Of a DNA stretch of 16,226 nucleotides, positions 2 to 13,801 are shown in pieces (within the stretch, counting starts at the first letter, position 1; each line of letters begins with the position of its first letter). The notes beneath the pieces are model-generated. The model saw nothing but the letters and a program-made list of their open reading frames with translations, was not told where the DNA came from and searched no databases. Source of the DNA: Octopus sinensis (lineage: Eukaryota). The DNA lies in the NCBI RefSeq assembly GCF_006345805.1, contig NW_021825182.1, positions 1 through 16,226 of the forward strand. Reading direction: 5' to 3'. A program made the translations under genes and the position numbers.

Positions 2-2191
2 ATCAATAAAACCAACTTGCATTTTAGGCAATTGGTGTCTTTTCCTGCGATCCATCATAGGCATGATATTACGAGTAAAATGGCTCTCCAAATCGCCTTG
101 TTCGAAGAACTCAGTTGCAACTGTAATAGCAGTCTTTCTTTGAACCTCCCATGGCTTAGTAATACTTGAAAGATCAGACGCAGTCATCATCATGCAAATT
201 AGTAAATCAATACTTTCTTGAGATGACAACGCTTGGTCATCGACTTCTAATTTCTGTTTGAAAATGTACCTTTTCTCAAAGTACATTAGGAGGTCCGTAG
301 CAAGGATTGATTTCTCTATAAGTTTAAGCCCCTGCTGATATTTTTCAACTGAGATGTTTCGTAAAATATTTGTTTCTTCATATTTTAATATCATGAGACA
401 TCGACTTATATGATGATATTCCATCACAGACGTGTTGTAAAGAATAGCAAGAGGAGATGCCGTCTTCGCTTGAAACGCATTATCACGTCCTCTATGATCA
501 ATATCATGACACAAACAAGCAATCAATAGGCAAATCCGATCAAATTCTGTGAAATATATTTGCAATTTGCCAGTAGTCAACATACAAAACATCATTTGAG
601 TAACATTGAGAGCATGGCGCCAATTATGATAGGTGACAGGTCGATAGTTCTTTTTAACAGTTAGTATCCACCTATATAATAATTCTTTAGATATGTTGAG
701 AACGGGCAATGTTTTGGCATCTAAAAATATGCGAACGACCAACAAAACAGTGTCATCCTCTGAATATAAGAAGTGATCGAAGTCGAATTGATAAATTTGA
801 GAATAATTTACAGATTCCATTTCCATACTTAAAAATCGATCTACAATTTCTGGATAGCAAGTAGCATGATAACTAAGCACTTTATTTGTAAATTCTAACT
901 GACATAACGTTTTTGCTGAAGTTTCATAAAGACGGCAATTATAGATAGCTAAACCGCAGAACATTGTAAATAGCTCCATCATGTTGATATCATTTCGACT
1001 AAAAATATCCCTTGAATCTCTGATATACACGATCCAACCGACAAAATTATTGCTGGCATCTTTAATTGCTAAGCAAAGCAACCAACTACCAATCTTACTT
1101 TCGAGTTGTATGGTATCAGACTCTGTAAATTCATTCAAATTAAACACATCAAAATTATTTTTACTATTCATATTTCGTTCAATTGCTTTTCTTACGTTTG
1201 GTGCTATAATTTGTTCTGAGATATCTGAAGCTCCTCTCGATAACTGAAAGACTTTCGAATATTCAGTTGGGAGAATTTTCTCTTTGTTCGGATCACTCAA
1301 ATAAATGCTGATACTCTCACACTGTAACATTTCCATGGCGAGTTTGGTAATTTCGGATATTAGTTTCGTTAGAGAATTTTGATATTTTAGTATACACCGA
1401 TTTAGTTTTAGTAATAAGCTGTGGCGATCGTGCTCTTCAATTGAACTTGCAAAGAAAGTGCTATTATTCATACTGATAGAACAAAATGACAAAAACCTCT
1501 CGAAGATATTTTCGTCTTCTGAGTCAAAATATTCCTCCTTTATTTTGTTTAATACTTGAGCGACAGCTAACAATTTATTATCATTGTCTAGAATTGGCAT
1601 ACATAGAATGCTTTTGGTACGAAATCCAGTCTTTTCGTCGACTTCACTCAAGAAACGAGGATCCTGATACACATCCTTAATATTTAATAGACATTTATTT
1701 TGAGCTACAAATCCTGAAATACCTTTTCCGAAGGGAATGCGTATGGCGTTTTCTTCAGTATGAAGTGATTCTTCAAGAGTAGATTCAGCTGTAACATCAA
1801 ACAGGGTCGAGATTAGATATTGAGTTTGTCCCGTTCCCCGAGCCAAAAAGAGACTTGCTTTTTCACACGGAAGTAAGGTACATAACTTCTTAAGAACTCG
1901 ATGGCATAGAGAATCTGTATGAAACTCACTGTTAAGAATTTTCACAACTTCTTTGTACAGTTCATTTTCCGTTAGAGTTTCGCTCTCGTCTTTTTGAGCC
2001 AGTTTCTTTTTAAACAAGGCATTTCCAATGAAATCAATGAAAGCATGTGCTTTTTCTATATGTATCTCAGTTTTAGCGAATATCTCTTCACCCAATTCGC
2101 TTAGACCATGTTCAGTGAGCCATGTTCTAACGAACAGTGGATTGTTCTTCAAGAACCCATCCACTTCTTCCTCAGTAAGTTCTGTTTCCAT
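2..2191 (-). CDS. Intronless GAF-GAF-catalytic cyclic nucleotide phosphodiesterase of the PDE5/6/11 family (closest in motif pattern to invertebrate cGMP-specific PDE5/Pde6). 3' end lies outside the window; candidate retrogene.
   Basis: Manual reverse-strand translation gives 730 codons with no stop, starting METELTEEEVDGFLKNNPLFVRTWL. An in-frame TAA lies three codons upstream (TAA AGA AAC ATG). GAF-A: SLFLARG...TLFDVT...IPFGKGISGFVA...NIKDVYQDPRF..EVDEKTGFRTKSILCMPI...AQVLNK...F...DE. Catalytic motifs: YHNWRHALNV (YHNWRH at 614-631), CHDIDHRG (HDIDH at 494-508), SVMEYHH, ILATDL, MMTASDLSSITKPW, EFFEQGD, LPKMQVGFID. Confidence 0.95.
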   Translation of the reverse strand, partial: METELTEEEVDGFLKNNPLFVRTWLTEHGLSELGEEIFAKTEIHIEKAHAFIDFIGNALFKKKLAQKDESETLTENELYKEVVKILNSEFHTDSLCHRVLKKLCTLLPCEKASLFLARGTGQTQYLISTLFDVTAESTLEESLHTEENAIRIPFGKGISGFVAQNKCLLNIKDVYQDPRFLSEVDEKTGFRTKSILCMPILDNDNKLLAVAQVLNKIKEEYFDSEDENIFERFLSFCSISMNNSTFFASSIEEHDRHSLLLKLNRCILKYQNSLTKLISEITKLAMEMLQCESISIYLSDPNKEKILPTEYSKVFQLSRGASDISEQIIAPNVRKAIERNMNSKNNFDVFNLNEFTESDTIQLESKIGSWLLCLAIKDASNNFVGWIVYIRDSRDIFSRNDINMMELFTMFCGLAIYNCRLYETSAKTLCQLEFTNKVLSYHATCYPEIVDRFLSMEMESVNYSQIYQFDFDHFLYSEDDTVLLVVRIFLDAKTLPVLNISKELLYRWILTVKKNYRPVTYHNWRHALNVTQMMFCMLTTGKLQIYFTEFDRICLLIACLCHDIDHRGRDNAFQAKTASPLAILYNTSVMEYHHISRCLMILKYEETNILRNISVEKYQQGLKLIEKSILATDLLMYFEKRYIFKQKLEVDDQALSSQESIDLLICMMMTASDLSSITKPWEVQRKTAITVATEFFEQGDLESHFTRNIMPMMDRRKRHQLPKMQVGFID

Positions 2192-2889
2192 GTTTCTTTA
2201 AAGTTTAAGTCCAAAAAAAAAAAAAAATGGTTCAATGAAGCCTGCAGTATTCTAAGAAACGTTTCATGAGAATTTCGATTTTCTTTTTTAATTCAGCAGT
2301 CTTCGCTACTTGAAATTAGAAGCAGGCGACAGATAGGTTTCCGTGGCTTGTCTTCGAAATCACGCTGTATAGTCTGTTGTGACGTAAGTAAAACTATGAC
2401 AAAATATTCAAAATCGTCATAAATTTGCATAATTTTGCCTTTGGTTTTATTGGTCTAAGGCAAAACGTTCCTCACACTGAATCATATTCTGTTCTGTGTT
2501 GTTGATAAATGACCAGATCGAAGATACAGTTGATGCTGACTTGAATCGAACTCTACGAAAAACGTCACTACATTATTGCTGGAATTAATTTGATTCAATT
2601 CTCAACACTTTCTGAAACTTCACCGCCGGTATCTTGATGCATTTTCCTTTCCTTAAGTTTAAAGCCCATGTTTAATGAATCTAGTTTGGTTCAACATATC
2701 ACCAAATATTTATTTAAATGTAAAACAATTGCCAAATCCAACGCTCTTTTACTGAAATTTCACTAACATCTACAGAGTAATTTTATGCGCGCGCATGCTG
2801 TATTTCGAGCTAGTGCATATGAAGATTTGTTTTATTTTATGCATGTATTCTCATGCATATAGTTGCATGTCTAGAAATGCACATATAGT

Positions 2890-3665
2890 CTTAAAATGGT
2901 AGGCTTCTGGAAAGTTTAACAAATTTTTACACTTCCAGTGATGACTTGGATCTGTAGTCTTTAAACCAGTCTTCCCCTTCTAGTTTTGAGAAGCCTAATT
3001 TCTCAAGGCTGGTGCTTAGGCAATTTGCTAAATATTCCAGTGCCACAATAATTACAGGTATTAACCTGAACTTGTAATCCGGGTAGAGTAACTGTAAATT
3101 ATTCAATAGTTTGGCATAGATGTTTTCTTTTTCGCTATCTTTAAGTTTTATGTTAACACCTTACTGGGCAGCTAATTTCCACTACTGTACACAATTTCTC
3201 TTCTCTGTCCCAAATCACTATGTCTGACATATTATGCTTCCATTTTATTGAGGTTTTCGCTGGGTCATTCCACCGGTACTCTTTCTAAGTATGAGTGGCT
3301 ATGACACCTGTCATATGTAGACTGTCCCTTTGACTTCAAGATTATCCACCTGACAGATCTCATTATACAGTGTCCTAGCTACAACATCATGTCTCATCGA
3401 TAGATAATACCGCGATAATTGCTTTGGACAACTGCTTATGATGTGGGTGATATCTTTGGTTTTAACTCCAGGAAGTCTGCTTCGTTTATCACATTTTCTT
3501 GCTTTTTCTACATCGTTGTCCCTTTTGTGCATCAGGTATTTGGTTGATATTTCTTGTTCGTGGCTTGCAAACGCATACCCTTGTTGGTCCATGACAGATC
3601 ACTTTGAGTGATAGTTTTGTACATTACTGTCATCTCGGAGCTTTCTGTTAACATATCCATGCATG
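2890..3665 (-). mobile_element. Decayed, 5'-truncated non-LTR retrotransposon with a restriction-like endonuclease (R2/R4/NeSL-type C-terminus)
   Basis: Broken minus-strand frames give MHGYV..., YAFASHEQEISTKY, a CCHC-like zinc-knuckle remnant (K..ITHIISSCP...Y..RHD.VAR), then KTSIKWKHNMSDIVIWDREEKLCTVVEISCP (PD-(D/E)xK remnant) and EKENIYAKL...LYPDYKFRLIPVIIVAL. Stops and frameshifts are present. Confidence 0.85.
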
Positions 3666-5571: not shown

Positions 5572-5840
5572 CATACAAACATACATATATATATACATAC
5601 ATACATACATACATACATACATACATACACAAACATACATACATACATACATACATACATACATACATGCATACATACATACACACCCAATACATACATA
5701 CATACACACATGCATACATACATACATTCTTACATACATACATACATACACACAAACATACATACATACATACATACATACATACATACACACAAACATA
5801 CATACATACACACAAACATACATACATACATGCATACATA
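5572..5840. repeat. (TACA)n compound microsatellite
   Basis: Direct inspection; the source of the spurious MYVC/HTYI ORFs. Confidence 0.95.
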
Positions 5841-6560: not shown

Positions 6561-6800
6561 CTTTTAATTTTTCCTTGAAAGACGTTTTTTCCGTTGTATG
6601 ATTTTCTGTGGTTTCCCTAACAAACAACTCAACTGCAGAGTCGAGGTTTCCGGGTCGCGATTTTGGTTGTTTTTCTCTTGGCATTTGTTTTGGATAAAAC
6701 ATCAAAGGAAATCCGAACAAGATGGTAATAGCAGCGATGAAGAGAAACCCTATCCACCAGGCACCAATCCAGTTGGGATCACTCGGTGTCATACCTTTAT
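6561..6800 (-). CDS. Internal exon of an organic anion transporting polypeptide (OATP/SLCO family)
   Basis: Encodes (x)KGMTPSDPNWIGAWWIGFLFIAAITILFGFPLMFYPKQMP...KEKLK, carrying the OATP signature DP.WxGAWWxG. Acceptor ...TTTTATTATTCCAG| at 6801 and donor |GTGAAA at 6560. Length 240 nt, phase 1-1. Confidence 0.92.
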
Positions 6801-6939
6801 CTGGAATAATAAAAGAATTAACAAATATTAGAACTTACTTTGAAAAGACGATTTTTCTTGAATTATTTGGAATGGAATTACGGTGCCTTCCTTCTCTTCA
6901 ACTTTCTCCCTGTCCCTCACCCCGTGTCTCTGTATATTT

Positions 6940-7202: not shown

Positions 7203-8044
7203 CTATTTCTTTATTACCCACAAGGTGCTAAACATAGAGGGAACAAACAAGGATAGACAAAGGGATTAAGTCGATTATATCGACCCCAGTGCGTAACTGG
7301 TACTTAATTTATCGACCCCGAAAGGATGAAAGGCAAAGTCGACCTCGGCGGAATTTGAACTCAGAACGTAACGGCAGATGAAATACCTATTTCTTTTCTA
7401 CCCACAAGGGGCTAAATACAGAGAGGACAAATAAATGGATTAAGTCGATTACATCGACCCCAGTGCGTAACTGGTACTTAATTTATCGACCCCGAAAGGA
7501 TGAAAGGCAAAGTCGACCTCGGCGGAATTTGAACTCAGAACGTAGCGACAGACGAAATACCTATTTCTTTTCTACCCACAAGGGGCTAAATACAGAGAGG
7601 ACAAATAAATGGATTAAGTCGATTACATCGACCCCAGTGCGTAACTGGTACTTACTTAATCGACCCCGAAAGGATGAAAGGCAAAGTCGACCTCGGCGGA
7701 ATTTGAACTCAGAACGTAGCGACAGACGAAATACCTATTTCTTTTCTACCCACAAGGGGCTAAATACAGAGAGGACAAACAAGGACAGACAAAACGATTA
7801 AGTCGATTACATCGACCCCAGTGCGTAACTGGTACTTACTTAATCGACCCCGAAAGGATGAAAGGCAAAGTCGACCTCGGCGGAATTTGAACTCAGAACG
7901 TAGCGACAGACGAAATACCTATTTCTTTACTACCCACAGGGGGGCTAAACGCAGAGAGGACAAACAAGGACAGACAAACGGATTAAGTCGATTACATCGC
8001 CGCTAAGCATTTCGCCCGGCATGCTAACATTTCTGCCAGCTCGC
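7203..8044 (-). mobile_element. SINE family 1 head-to-tail array (four bodies of about 175-185 bp plus an internally deleted head unit)
   Basis: Repeated GTCGATTACATCGACCCCAGTGCGTAACTGGTACTT...GGCGGAATTTGAACTCAGAACG units. Junctions GAAATACCTATTTCTTT near 7388, 7562, 7738 and 7920. Head sequence at 8000-8044. Confidence 0.92.
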
Positions 8045-8274
8045 ACACAAACACATATTCCACAGAACACATGTTAATTTACCGAAAATGAGATAAAACT
8101 ATGCAAAGTGCTCAACAAAATATTTAATAACAACCAAAAGGATTTCAGAGCTGAGATAAACGTCTCAGTGTTAGAGATTATTCCATATGAAACACAAAAC
8201 AGATACGTGATGTAGCGTACTTTATGAATAAGCTGCAAGTGGTTGTGTACACCGTGGAAAATATAAACTGGTTC

Positions 8275-9566
8275 AGACACAAAGACAATAGAGAGATAAA
8301 GAGACAAATAGATAAGCAGGTAGACATGTGTAGACATAGAGACAGACAGATGTACAGACAAATAGATAAGCAGGTAGACATGTGTAGACATAGAGACAGA
8401 CAGATGTACAGACAAATAGATAAGCAGGTAGACATGTGTGAATAGAGACAGACAGATGTACAGACAAAAGAGTAGCAGGTAGACATGTGTAGACATAGGT
8501 AGAGAGACAGATGTACAGACAAATAGATAAGCAGGTAGACAGTGTAGACATAGAGACAGACAGATGTACAGACAAATAGATAAGCAGGTAGACATGTGTA
8601 GACATAGAGACAGACAGATGTACAGACAAATAGATAAGCAGGTATAGACATGTGTAGACATAGAGACAGACAGATGTACAGACAAATAGATAAGCAGGTA
8701 GACATGTGTAGACATAGAGACAGACAGATGTACAGACAAATAGATAAGCAGGTAGACATGTGTAGACATAGAGACAGACAGATGTACAGACAAATAGATA
8801 AGAAGGTAGGTAGACATGTGTTAGACATAGAGACAGACAGATGTACAGACAAATAGATAAGCAGGTAGACATGTGTAGACATAGAGACAGACAGATGTAC
8901 AGACAAATAGATAAGCAGGTAGACATGTGTAGACATAGAGACAGACAGATGTACAGAGAAAATAGATAAGCAGGTAGCATGTGACAGTAGACATAGAGAC
9001 AGACAGATGTACAGACAAATAGATAAGCAGGTAGACATGTGTAGACATAGAGACAGACAGATGTACAGACAAATAGATAAGCAGGTAGACATGTGTAGAC
9101 ATAGAGACACACAGATGTACAGACAAATAGATAAGCAGGTAGACATGTGTAGACATAGAGACAGACAGCAGATGTACAGACAACAAATAGAGAAGCAGGT
9201 AGACATGTGTAGACATAGAGACAGACAGATGTACAGACAAATAGATAAGCAGGGAGACATGTGTAGACATAGAGGACAGACAGATGTACAGACAAATAGA
9301 TAAGCAGGTAGACATGTGTAGACATAGAGACAGACAGATGTACAGACAAATAGATAAGCAGGTAGACATGTGTAGACATAGAGACAGACAGATGTACAGA
9401 CAAATAGATAAGCAGGTAGACATGTGTAGACATAGAGACAGACAGATGTACAGACAAATAGATAAGCAGGTAGACATGTGTAGACATAGAGACAGACAGA
9501 TGTACAGACAAATAGATAAGCAGGTAGACATGTGTAGACATAGAGACAGACAGATGTACAGACAAA
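8275..9566. repeat. 54-bp minisatellite, about 24 copies
   Basis: Unit GACAGACAGATGTACAGACAAATAGATAAGCAGGTAGACATGTGTAGACATAGA. It translates as the 18-aa repeat MCRHRDRQMYRQIDKQVD, confirming the 54-nt period; scattered indels are present. Confidence 0.95.
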
Positions 9567-9701
9567 ATAGGTAATAACAAAAACAGAGCATACAATAGTA
9601 GATAAGCAAATAGATATATAGTTATAAAAATTGATGGTATAATAGAAAAACAGACAGGTGTGTGTGTGCGCCTGTGTGTTTGTGTGTATACTAATATATA
9701 T

Positions 9702-10277
9702 TTCTTTACTACCCACAAGGGGCTAAACACAGAGGACAAAAACGGAGAGACAAAGGGATTACGTCGATTACATCGACCCCAGTGCGTAACTGGTACTTAC
9801 TAATCGACCCGAAGGAATGAAAGGCAAGGCGACCTCGGCGGAATTTGTTAAACCAATCATAAAGGCAGACGCAAATATATATTTCTTTACTAACCACGAG
9901 GGCTAAACACAGAGGGGACAAACAGAAAACGGATTAAGTCGATTACATCGACCCCCAGTGTGTAACTGGTACTTACTTAATCGACCCCGAAAGGATGAAA
10001 GGCAAAGTCGACCTCGGCGGAATTTGAACTCAGATCATAAAGGCAGACGAAATACCTATTTCTTTACTACCCACAAGGGGCTAAACACAGAGGGGACAAA
10101 CAAATAGATTAAGTCGATTACATCGACCCCAGTGCGTAACTGGTACTTACTTAATCGACCCCGAAAGGATGAAAGGCAAAGTCGACCTCGGCAGAATTTG
10201 AACTCAGAACGTAACAGCAGACGAAATACGACTGCGCATTTCGCCCGGCGTGCTAACGTTTCTGCCAGCTGACCGCC
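9702..10277 (-). mobile_element. SINE family 1 head-to-tail array (three bodies, one head)
   Basis: Same unit as 7203-8044. Intact head (GCATTTCGCCCGGCGTGCTAACGTTTCTGCCAGCT) at ~10235-10277. Confidence 0.9.
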
Positions 10278-12668: not shown

Positions 12669-13801
12669 TATATTATCTAAGTCTATGGACTATATTTGGA
12701 ATACAGGACAATATAATGGATTCACACATAATTATTATGGATTACTACAGAAGACTTACCGAGGAGGAATATATGAATTTCAAGATTCTCATACTAAAGT
12801 GTGCTTACCAAAATCAAAAGCAGTAATTCTTAATTTTTATTTTATATTTTGGATCTTTACCCTTTGAACGGCAGATCGAGAAACTAATTTTTTGTAGCTT
12901 AACACTTTCAAACTTCGGACACTGAACGCTAACTCTAAAACCCTGACCCTAACCCTAAAGCCCTAACCCTAACCCTAAAACCTTTACTCTAACCCTATCC
13001 CTAAACCCTGACCCTAACCCTAAAACCTTAAAGCTAAAACCAGTACAAACGCACGAAATATGTCATAAATAACAGTGACAAACAAAATACACACCGCCGA
13101 TAGTTGTTGACAAACAACGGCAGTAATTTTATTCAGCTGAATACACGTCATTGATTGGTTGAAATTACCGAAATATGACAACTTTAACACGAAATAACTT
13201 TAAAAATATAAACTTTTCTCAACAACACTAAGAGTAAAAGATGTTTTATATGACACATTCTACCAGTGTCCGAAGTTTGAAAGTGTTTAGTTACAAAAAA
13301 TTAATTTCTCGATCAGCCGTTCAAAGGAAAAAGATCCTATATTTCAAACAAACACCATTTTCCCATATTACTTCATAATTAAGAAAAAAAAATACCATTC
13401 ATAAAATTATAGAAATTTCACATTTGATATTTCTGAGGAGCAGAAGAGTGATCTATAAATGTTTATCAATATAGGATTCCATTATTCTATATTATCTAAG
13501 TCTATGAACTATATTTGGAATACAAGACAATATAATGGATTTTACACATAACTATTATGGATAATTAGGGAATAATTACGAGGAAACATATATGGATTTA
13601 AAGACTCTCATACTAAAGTGAACTTACCAAAATCAAAAGCAGTAATTTTTAATTTTATTTTATATTTCAAACAAACACCATTTTTCCATATTTATATTAA
13701 AAAAAAACTACCATTCGATAAATTATACACATTTCACATTTTATATCTCTGAAGATCAGAGGAGTTGTCTATAAATGCTTATCAATATAGGATTCCATTA
13801 T
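12669..13801 (+). repeat. Two-copy ~314-bp tandem duplication; copy 1 is interrupted by a MITE
   Basis: TATTATCTAAGTCTATG.ACTATATTTGGAATACA...CTTACCAAAATCAAAAGCAGTAATT...CAAACAAACACCATT...ATCAATATAGGATTCCATTAT occurs as 12669-12850 + 13338-13487 and again as 13488-13801. Confidence 0.85.
12851..13337. mobile_element. MITE with 74-bp TIRs, GG termini, an ~8-bp TSD and internal telomere-like repeats (Merlin-like by terminal features, tentative)
   Basis: TIRs GGATCTTT..CCTTTGAACGGC.GATCGAGAAA.TAATTTTTTGTA.CT.AACACTTTCAAACTTCGGACACTG at 12851-12924 and 13264-13337. Flanks TATATTTT / TATATTTC. (CCCTAA)-like tract at 12929-13040. Confidence 0.85.

What the first reader, a model, noticed from the sequence alone, without database searches (positions are those of the whole stretch)
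2..2191. Intact, intronless PDE5/6/11-family phosphodiesterase: candidate functional retrogene missed by the ORF track
Seen in sequence: 730 consecutive sense codons covering the native-looking N-terminal helix, both GAF domains and almost all of the catalytic domain, with no intron and no stop. The metal-binding His/Asp motifs and the invariant Gln (QVGFID) are retained. Established knowledge: animal PDE5/6/11 genes are typically highly multi-exonic. Inference: this is a retroposed copy kept by selection, since it is clearly diverged from canonical family motifs yet still open. It may be a lineage-specific cGMP PDE.
Basis: partly seen in the sequence, partly recalled or inferred. Interest (0 to 1): 0.75.

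Follow-up and report, generated by a model that had tools for sequence, protein, structure and literature searches.

The report
Octopus single-exon PDE5/6-like phosphodiesterase gene
The open frame is a real, probably working octopus cGMP phosphodiesterase gene without introns, but it is one copy of an old, already annotated octopod family of such genes, not a newly made or overlooked retrogene.

Summary
On the minus strand, 2191->2 is 730 sense codons from an ATG, and the frame runs off the contig end. It encodes GAF-A, GAF-B and a class I PDE catalytic domain with all metal-binding and Gln motifs (human PDE5A E=1e-125). The ORF list omitted it only because it omits ORFs that run off an end.

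- The window is collinear (88% nt) with the O. bimaculoides locus of XP_014774802.2, an annotated single-exon "cGMP-specific PDE-like" gene.
- dN/dS against that gene is 0.47 (0.34-0.68): constrained, but loosely.
- Every cephalopod relative I could check (five O. bimaculoides, five or more O. vulgaris, one Argonauta) also has a single-exon CDS. They lie in tandem arrays and form one clade (bootstrap 100).
- The Biomphalaria orthologue has about 22 coding exons over 93 kb, so introns were lost wholesale, most simply by an ancient retroposition.
- No spliced octopus parent appeared in four searches. This copy shares 5' flank with its paralogues, so it arose by DNA duplication.
- Haliotis has a separate single-exon copy beside a multi-isoform gene.

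Verdict: an ordinary new orthologue of a known gene. The family history (probable retrogene replacement, then amplification) is mildly interesting and was not found in the literature searched.

The parts
2..2191 (-). Partial single-exon CDS (730 codons, ATG at 2189-2191) of a PDE5/6-like GAF-GAF-PDE; the 3' end is cut off by the contig end
   Evidence: orthologue P0002 (XP_014774802.2) starts at the same ATG and continues 243 codons past QVGFID
1472..1915 (-). GAF-A (aa 93-240) with an intact NKFDE-type motif (N215 K216 F222 D226 E227)
   Evidence: Pfam GAF E=2e-20; motif alignment; lowest dN/dS of the protein, 0.28
917..1408 (-). GAF-B (about aa 262-425, limits approximate); the NK of the NKFDE motif is replaced (RD) in this and all other octopus copies
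   Evidence: PDE5A alignment; motif alignment
2..631 (-). Catalytic domain (aa 521-730): HNWRH 522-526, HDIDH 562-566, ATDL 631-634, D673, Q684 (PDE5 Q775 equivalent), Q725 in QVGFID; window-specific N570D and A676S
   Evidence: Pfam PDEase_I E=4e-72
2192..3453 (-). 5' flank conserved with O. bimaculoides (88% nt); 2192-2675 is also shared with the paralogue loci of P0003 and P0004; the T16 run just before the ATG is window-specific
   Evidence: blastn; upstream comparison
6562..6801 (-). Isolated OATP/SLCO-type exon (Pfam OATP positions 202-280 of 545), on the same strand and upstream of the PDE; genomic context, not part of the PDE gene
   Evidence: Pfam E=1e-17; no counterpart in the collinear part of L001

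Best explanation
The window holds the first 730 codons of a functional, single-exon gene for a PDE5/6-like cGMP phosphodiesterase from an octopus. It is the orthologue (or a very close paralogue) of O. bimaculoides XP_014774802.2. Inferred mode of action, by homology with PDE5: the protein dimerises, binds cGMP at GAF-A, and hydrolyses cGMP at a two-metal HD-type site. There Gln725 reads the base and is held in place by Gln684. The gene belongs to an octopod family of at least five to ten single-exon paralogues per genome, arranged mostly head to tail. That family stands in the place of the single, roughly 22-exon PDE5/6-like (Drosophila Pde6-type, CaaX-ended) gene of other molluscs. The likeliest history has three steps. 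First, one ancient retroposition of a processed mRNA in a cephalopod ancestor, before the Octopus-Argonauta split. Second, loss of the spliced parent. Third, DNA-level tandem and segmental duplication with fast divergence. The window copy came from that last step, not from a retroposition of its own. Shown: open frame, domains, motifs, collinearity, single-exon structure of the relatives, monophyly, dN/dS below 1. Inferred: enzyme activity and cGMP preference, retroposition as the cause of intron loss, loss of the parent.
For: Open frame and domains. Motifs. Collinearity with L001 over CDS, 1.26 kb of 5' flank and further anchors out to window 15917. Same ATG as P0002. dN/dS 0.47 (95% CI 0.34-0.68), GAF-A 0.28. 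No significant excess of window-specific changes (35 vs 23, p=0.15). Gene range equals (aa+1) x 3 for P0002, P0003, P0006 and the 692-aa gene (O. bimaculoides), for P0004, P0005 and the 1033- and 1135-aa genes (O. vulgaris), and for Argonauta P0175. Biomphalaria orthologue 92.6 kb with about 22 coding exons. Octopod clade bootstrap 100; non-cephalopod mollusc clade bootstrap 90-99; no cephalopod sequence inside it. Paralogue homology reaches 435-484 bp upstream of the ATG. Only single-exon family members appear among Octopus hits in listings that span cnidarians to insects. CaaX endings in paralogues, other molluscs and insect Pde6.
Against: The 3' third of the gene is missing from the window, so intactness is unproven. 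The O. bimaculoides orthologue lacks the last ~175 residues and the CaaX box of its paralogues, and an assembly gap follows 115 bp after its stop. dN/dS of 0.47 is loose for an enzyme, and sister paralogue pairs reach 0.76 and 0.94. No O. vulgaris or O. sinensis protein more than 72% identical was listed, so this copy may be dispensable in some species. No poly(A) remnant or target-site duplication could be examined. The homologue searches are not exhaustive: P0006 was missing although it was part of the query. A spliced or unannotated parent therefore cannot be excluded. Trees are neighbour-joining only, and the cephalopod branches are long. There are no expression data for this copy.
Confidence: 0.72

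Rival explanations
1. One reading: a recent, lineage-specific retrocopy of a still-present multi-exon PDE5/6/11 parent, kept by selection.
For: Intronless CDS and dN/dS below 1. Haliotis shows that such parent-plus-retrocopy pairs do arise in molluscs.
Against: An orthologue exists in O. bimaculoides at a collinear site. All octopod relatives examined are single-exon and form one clade that includes Argonauta. The 5' flank is shared with paralogues, and the orthologue is truncated at the 3' end relative to them rather than at the 5' end, which fits DNA duplication. No spliced octopus gene was found.
Confidence: 0.04
2. A decaying or dispensable duplicate: the frame is still open over these 730 codons, but the gene is losing function through relaxed constraint, loss of the prenylated C-terminus, or truncation.
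For: dN/dS is 0.47 overall and 0.54 in the catalytic part. There are window-specific changes at two near-invariant columns, N570D and A676S. The orthologue lacks the CaaX tail. No close O. vulgaris or O. sinensis counterpart was listed. The 3' end is unseen.
Against: Both species keep 730 or more codons open at dS=0.18. Neutral drift at that divergence would be expected to introduce several stops or indels (inference). The upper confidence limit of dN/dS, 0.68, is below 1. GAF-A is well constrained at 0.28. All catalytic ligands are kept. The rate does not differ significantly from the orthologue.
Confidence: 0.15
3. The intronless state came from gradual or recombination-mediated intron loss at the original locus, or from gene conversion by a cDNA, rather than from a retrocopy inserted at a new site.
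For: No poly(A) remnant, target-site duplication or parent locus was seen. The cephalopod clade sits where the orthologue is expected in the tree.
Against: All of about 22 coding introns are missing in every copy examined, and no partly spliced intermediate was seen among octopods or the three unnamed sister sequences. Wholesale loss is the usual signature of a reverse-transcribed mRNA (established knowledge).
Confidence: 0.08
4. Artefact: cDNA contamination or misassembly created an apparently intronless gene.
For: The contig is short (16.2 kb) and ends inside the CDS.
Against: Non-coding flanks with repeats are collinear with a chromosome-level O. bimaculoides assembly over more than 13 kb. 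The same single-exon structure appears in three independent chromosome-scale assemblies.
Confidence: 0.01

Closest known systems
[quoted passage not shown]
   Same: 84% aa and 90% nt identity over all 730 codons. Same ATG, same in-frame upstream stop, collinear flanks, single-exon CDS, same domain order.
   Different: Different species, or a very close duplicate, with dS=0.18. The window has N570D, A676S and a T16 run before the ATG. The window carries an SLCO exon upstream that L001 lacks. The window's C-terminus is unknown; P0002 ends without a CaaX box.
Octopus paralogue arrays: O. bimaculoides XP_014782379.1, XP_014782381.1, XP_014782380.1, XP_014788894.2; O. vulgaris CAI9740185-CAI9740195; O. 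sinensis XP_029650736/39/41/45; Argonauta hians GAB1609066.1
   Same: Single-exon CDS, GAF-GAF-PDE layout, the same N-terminal helix, GAF-B without NK, one clade with bootstrap 100.
   Different: 35-72% identical. Most are 1000-1136 aa with a long acidic tail and a CaaX box. They sit in a tight array about 640 kb away from P0002. Two (Ovul 1033 aa, Obim 692 aa) have Glu in place of the invariant Gln.
Drosophila Pde6 (CG8279) and the invertebrate PDE5/6-like gene of other molluscs (e.g. Biomphalaria KAK0041345.1)
   Same: Orthologous group in the trees; GAF-A/GAF-B/catalytic layout; long C-terminal tail ending in CaaX in most members.
   Different: These genes are multi-exon (Biomphalaria about 22 coding exons over 92.6 kb) and single-copy. 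They keep the NK motif in GAF-B and HRGTNN. They are only about 39-43% identical to the window protein.
Human PDE5A (PDB 9lss, 3bjc)
   Same: Best solved-structure match, E=1e-125 over aa 80-730. All metal ligands and Q817/Q775 equivalents are kept, and the GAF-A NKFDE motif is present.
   Different: The window protein has no counterpart of the ~70-residue PDE5A N-terminal extension; instead a short helix begins at residue 1. GAF-B is divergent. PDE5A is a roughly 21-exon gene (established knowledge).
Haliotis rufescens single-exon copy XP_046371054.1 beside multi-isoform XP_046371544.1
   Same: A single-exon PDE5/6-like gene in a mollusc.
   Different: It groups with non-cephalopod molluscs (bootstrap 90-99) and never with octopods (0/100). 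It coexists with a canonical gene at 59% identity. It is therefore an independent event.

Membership tests
Class I cyclic nucleotide phosphodiesterase (Pfam PF00233) | Catalytic domain with the HD-type metal-binding His/Asp set (HNWRH, HDxxH, TD, D) | tested here: met
   PDEase_I E=4e-72, 243 bits against a cut-off of 24.8; all motifs aligned and conserved. The last ~24 profile positions lie beyond the contig end.
Class I cyclic nucleotide phosphodiesterase (Pfam PF00233) | Invariant purine-reading glutamine | tested here: met
   Q725 in QVGFID, plus Q684 at the PDE5 Q775 position.
GAF-containing PDE5/6/11 group | Tandem GAF-A and GAF-B N-terminal to the catalytic domain | tested here: met
   Pfam GAF with two stretches; continuous alignment to full-length PDE5A residues 153-822.
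GAF-containing PDE5/6/11 group | NKFDE cGMP-binding motif in GAF-A | tested here: met
   N215 K216 ... F222 ... D226 E227. cGMP binding itself was not tested.
Invertebrate PDE5/6-like (Drosophila Pde6 type) | Groups with mollusc and insect PDE5/6-like genes rather than with PDE11 | tested here: met
   NJ trees: PDE11 (Mercenaria, vertebrates) falls outside; the node joining PDE5/6-like genes has bootstrap 100.
Invertebrate PDE5/6-like (Drosophila Pde6 type) | Long C-terminal tail ending in a CaaX prenylation box | not testable with these tools
   The C-terminus lies beyond the contig end. Paralogues end in CMIS, CVIS, CTIS, CKIS or CVIC, but the orthologue P0002 ends NDQNRQY.
Retrogene | Lacks all introns of the ancestral gene | tested here: met
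   No interruption in 730 codons, against about 22 coding exons in Biomphalaria. Untranslated-region introns cannot be judged.
Retrogene | A spliced parent gene in the same genome | tested here: inconclusive
   No non-family Octopus protein appeared, but the searches are not exhaustive and no genome-wide tblastn was possible.
Retrogene | Poly(A) remnant and target-site duplications at this locus | not testable with these tools
   The 3' end is outside the window. In O. bimaculoides a (GT)n tract and an assembly gap follow the stop.
Retrogene | This copy itself arose through an RNA intermediate | tested here: not met
   Homology with the paralogue loci extends 435-484 bp upstream of the ATG. 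The orthologue is truncated at the 3' end relative to its paralogues, not at the 5' end. This fits DNA duplication, though a long 5' UTR carried by an mRNA cannot be fully excluded.

The most novel reading that the evidence does not exclude
In cephalopods the ancestral ~22-exon PDE5/6-like gene was replaced outright by a retrocopy. In octopods that retrocopy was then amplified into fast-evolving tandem arrays of 5-10 or more genes (dN/dS 0.5-0.9). Some copies lost the CaaX box and some replaced the invariant substrate-reading Gln with Glu. This would be a lineage-specific remodelling of cGMP signalling. It may be tied to male reproduction: one octopus 'cGMP-specific PDE-like' gene is testis-biased in O. 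sinensis (PMC11202624), although it could not be mapped to this paralogue.
Probability: 0.45. Interest if true: 0.5.

Novelty: new member of a known kind. Interest (0 to 1): 0.3.

Why it matters
As a single locus it matters little: it adds one more orthologue of an annotated octopus PDE gene, and that orthologue is truncated by a contig end. The family-level picture is of moderate interest for cephalopod genome evolution and for PDE biology. It offers a probable case of retrogene replacement of a conserved signalling enzyme, followed by tandem amplification and rapid divergence. It also supplies natural variants at positions that set substrate choice and membrane anchoring in PDE5/6. I found no description of this in the searchable literature.

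Tried and rejected
(1) Two look-ups failed. Gene-structure look-up for Saccostrea P0012 and for the canonical Haliotis gene P0318 returned no record. Their multi-exon nature rests only on their 'isoform X' names.

(2) Searches for squid, cuttlefish or Nautilus members. Two profile searches and the exhaustive representative search gave no named decapodiform sequence. Three unnamed single-ORF sequences (ENA P0162, ENA P0170, Logan P0163) are sister to the octopods (bootstrap 100), but their organisms could not be identified. L010 shares no octopus repeats with the window.

(3) T16 run plus 'tttaaag' before the ATG as a conserved 3' splice acceptor. Rejected: the T run is window-specific, and only the last ~30 bases are shared with P0002, P0003 and P0004.

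(4) Long ORFs at 8178-9739. These are artefacts of a 54-bp tandem repeat and have no Pfam hits.

(5) Rfam and tRNA scans of the window found nothing.

It was replaced by stop-free pieces.

(7) Identifying the source species was not possible. dS to O. bimaculoides (0.18) is slightly above the O. bimaculoides-O. vulgaris values for other paralogues (0.12-0.15).

(8) Structure prediction was not run. The 40%-identity alignment to full-length PDE5A already fixes the fold.

Full report
**1. Observation**

The minus strand from 2191 down to 2 translates into 730 sense codons beginning METELTEEEV. An in-frame stop sits three codons upstream of the ATG. Given the local composition, 730 open codons have a chance probability of about 2e-25.

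Pfam finds PDEase_I at aa 521-730 (E=4e-72, profile positions 1-214 of 238) and GAF with two stretches. The best solved structure is full-length human PDE5A, which aligns to aa 80-730 at E=1e-125 without large gaps.

The frame leaves the window at base 2. The window's own protein is on record on a contig of 16226 bases, the same length as the window. The window therefore appears to be the whole contig, and the gene is cut by the contig end. The ORF list omitted the frame simply because it does not list ORFs that run off an end.

**2. What the gene is**

The nearest proteins are all from Octopus (accessions):
- O. bimaculoides XP_014774802.2 (P0002, 973 aa): 84% identity.
- XP_014782379.1 (P0003): 72%.
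- O. vulgaris CAI9740194.1 (P0004): 70%.
- Further paralogues: 45-49%.
- Other molluscs: 39-42%.

The window aligns collinearly with the P0002 locus (L001). Window 1-3453 matches L001 12191-8729 at 88% nucleotide identity. That stretch covers the CDS plus 1.26 kb of 5' flank. Further anchors follow in the same order out to window 15917. The ATG and the upstream stop are the same. The window is therefore the orthologue, or a very close duplicate, of an annotated gene in another octopus species.

**3. Functional state**

- All catalytic ligands are kept: HNWRH 522-526, HDIDH 562-566, ATDL, D673, Q725, and Q684 at the PDE5 Q775 position. The GAF-A NKFDE motif is also kept. GAF-B has lost its NK in every octopus copy.
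- Nei-Gojobori dN/dS against P0002 is 0.47 (bootstrap 95% CI 0.34-0.68; dN 0.084, dS 0.179). By region it is 0.28 in GAF-A and 0.54 in the catalytic part.
- With P0003 and P0004 as reference, the window lineage has 35 private amino-acid changes against 23 in P0002 (p=0.15). Only two of them fall in columns that are at least 95% conserved: N570D in the HRGxNN motif, and A676S.

The copy is constrained, but loosely. Whether it is intact cannot be settled, because about a quarter of the gene is missing from the window. P0002 continues 243 codons past QVGFID. It lacks the last ~175 residues and the CaaX box of its paralogues, and a (GT)n tract and an assembly gap follow its stop.

**4. Intron status of relatives**

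For every cephalopod relative I could look up, the annotated gene range equals (aa+1) x 3 bases, which means a single-exon CDS:
- O. bimaculoides: P0002, P0003, P0006 and a 692-aa gene.
- O. vulgaris: P0004, P0005, and the 1033-aa and 1135-aa genes.
- Argonauta hians: GAB1609066.1.

An unnamed ENA sequence in the sister group (P0162) is also one uninterrupted ORF of 3822 bases.

The genes lie in arrays. In O. bimaculoides four of them sit within 10.42-10.44 Mb of CM046624.1, and P0002 lies about 640 kb further on. In O. vulgaris the accessions CAI9740185-95 are consecutive.

By contrast, the Biomphalaria orthologue spans 92.6 kb with about 22 coding exons.

**5. Phylogeny**

The trees are neighbour-joining with 100 bootstraps.
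- All Octopus and Argonauta copies form one clade (bootstrap 100).
- Argonauta nests beside the O. vulgaris 1135-aa group (99), so part of the amplification predates that split.
- The octopods plus three unnamed single-ORF sequences form a clade (100) on a long stem.
- Chiton, gastropod and bivalve genes form a separate clade (90-99). It contains both Haliotis genes and no cephalopod sequence.
- Insect Pde6, echinoderm and cnidarian PDE5-like genes come next, and PDE11 is outside.
- Most members from octopus to insects end in a CaaX box.

The octopod family therefore occupies the place of the single Drosophila-Pde6-type gene of other invertebrates.

**6. Is there a spliced parent?**

I ran four searches: the single sequence, an octopus profile, an exhaustive representative search, and a deep cephalopod profile. 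They returned Octopus proteins only from this single-exon family, while also listing orthologues from cnidarians to insects.

This favours loss of the spliced parent, that is, retrogene replacement. It is not proof. The indexed searches miss things: P0006 was absent although it was part of the query. No genome-wide tblastn was possible either.

Haliotis is instructive. It has a single-exon copy (XP_046371054.1) beside a multi-isoform gene (XP_046371544.1), and the two are 59% identical. In no bootstrap replicate does it group with the octopods. It is therefore an independent event.

**7. Origin of this particular copy**

Homology between the window and the P0003 and P0004 loci runs 484 and 435 bp upstream of the ATG. 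At the other end, P0002 matches P0003 only as far as residue ~915 of 1091. Shared 5' flank together with a 3' truncation fits DNA-level duplication better than a second retroposition.

An ancient retroposition as the source of the family's intronless state remains the best explanation.

**8. Context and literature**

The window carries an SLCO/OATP exon (Pfam OATP positions 202-280) on the same strand 4.4 kb upstream of the PDE. In O. bimaculoides the PDE lies between two half-length OATP gene models. The downstream model holds OATP positions 334-392 and a Kazal domain. The PDE is therefore probably nested in, or splits, an SLCO gene.

No paper in the library describes this PDE family, its intronless state or its expansion. 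One gonad transcriptome study lists a 'cGMP-specific PDE-like' gene as testis-biased in O. sinensis (PMC11202624). It cannot be assigned to a paralogue.

**9. Verdict**

This is a real, probably functional gene. It is a new orthologue of a known, annotated kind, and it is neither overlooked nor recently retroposed. The family history is the more interesting part and deserves a proper genome-wide test.

Noticed in passing
window 6562-6801 (-): An intact OATP/SLCO exon (Pfam OATP positions 202-280, E=1e-17) lies upstream of the PDE on the same strand. It has no counterpart at the collinear place in O. bimaculoides L001. There the PDE sits between two half-length OATP gene models (324 and 315 aa), so the PDE may be nested in an SLCO intron.
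   Followed up: partly
window 8302-9574: A 54-bp unit is repeated about 23 times (94% matches) in a purine-rich stretch. It produces overlapping spurious ORFs of up to 512 aa in several minus-strand frames.
   Followed up: yes
window 7259-7964 and 9693-10228: Two arrays of a 174-bp unit (4 and 3 copies). The unit also occurs singly in all O. bimaculoides and O. vulgaris loci fetched, and in the Argonauta locus, so it is probably a SINE-like octopod repeat amplified in tandem here.
   Followed up: partly
window 12939-13023: An interstitial telomere-like repeat, (AACCCT) about 13 times (the complement of TTAGGG), lies inside a very AT-rich stretch (GC 22-29% over 11.5-14.5 kb) with long (AT)n runs.
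   Followed up: no
window 5572-5840: A (CATA)68 microsatellite. It underlies several overlapping 110-125-aa ORFs on both strands.
   Followed up: no
window 2210-2225 (-): A T16 run sits 20 bases before the ATG. It is absent from the O. bimaculoides orthologue and from the paralogues, so it is not a conserved splice or promoter feature.
   Followed up: yes
L004 3197-6298 (O. vulgaris 1033-aa gene, P0008) and L003 2322-4400 (O. bimaculoides 692-aa gene, XP_014782380.1): These paralogues replace the invariant substrate-reading Gln (QVGFID) with Glu (EVKYFD / EVEYFD). The pair evolves at dN/dS 0.94. This suggests changed substrate choice or loss of activity.
   Followed up: partly
L001 12920-13462: The O. 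bimaculoides orthologue stops without a CaaX box. The stop is followed 43 bases later by a (GT)n tract and then a 426-base assembly gap, so its true 3' end is uncertain.
   Followed up: partly
L006 2001-4655 (Haliotis rufescens): Abalone has its own single-exon PDE5/6-like gene (XP_046371054.1; also present in H. cracherodii and H. rubra) beside a multi-isoform canonical gene. This looks like an independent mollusc retrogene of the same enzyme.
   Followed up: partly
L010 5001-8822 and L008 1001-3370 (ENA assemblies ERZ21867824, ERZ24900295): Full-length PDE5/6-like proteins are encoded as single uninterrupted ORFs on large eukaryotic contigs inside assemblies filed as metagenomes. P0162 is sister to the octopod clade. 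The organisms are unknown.
   Followed up: partly
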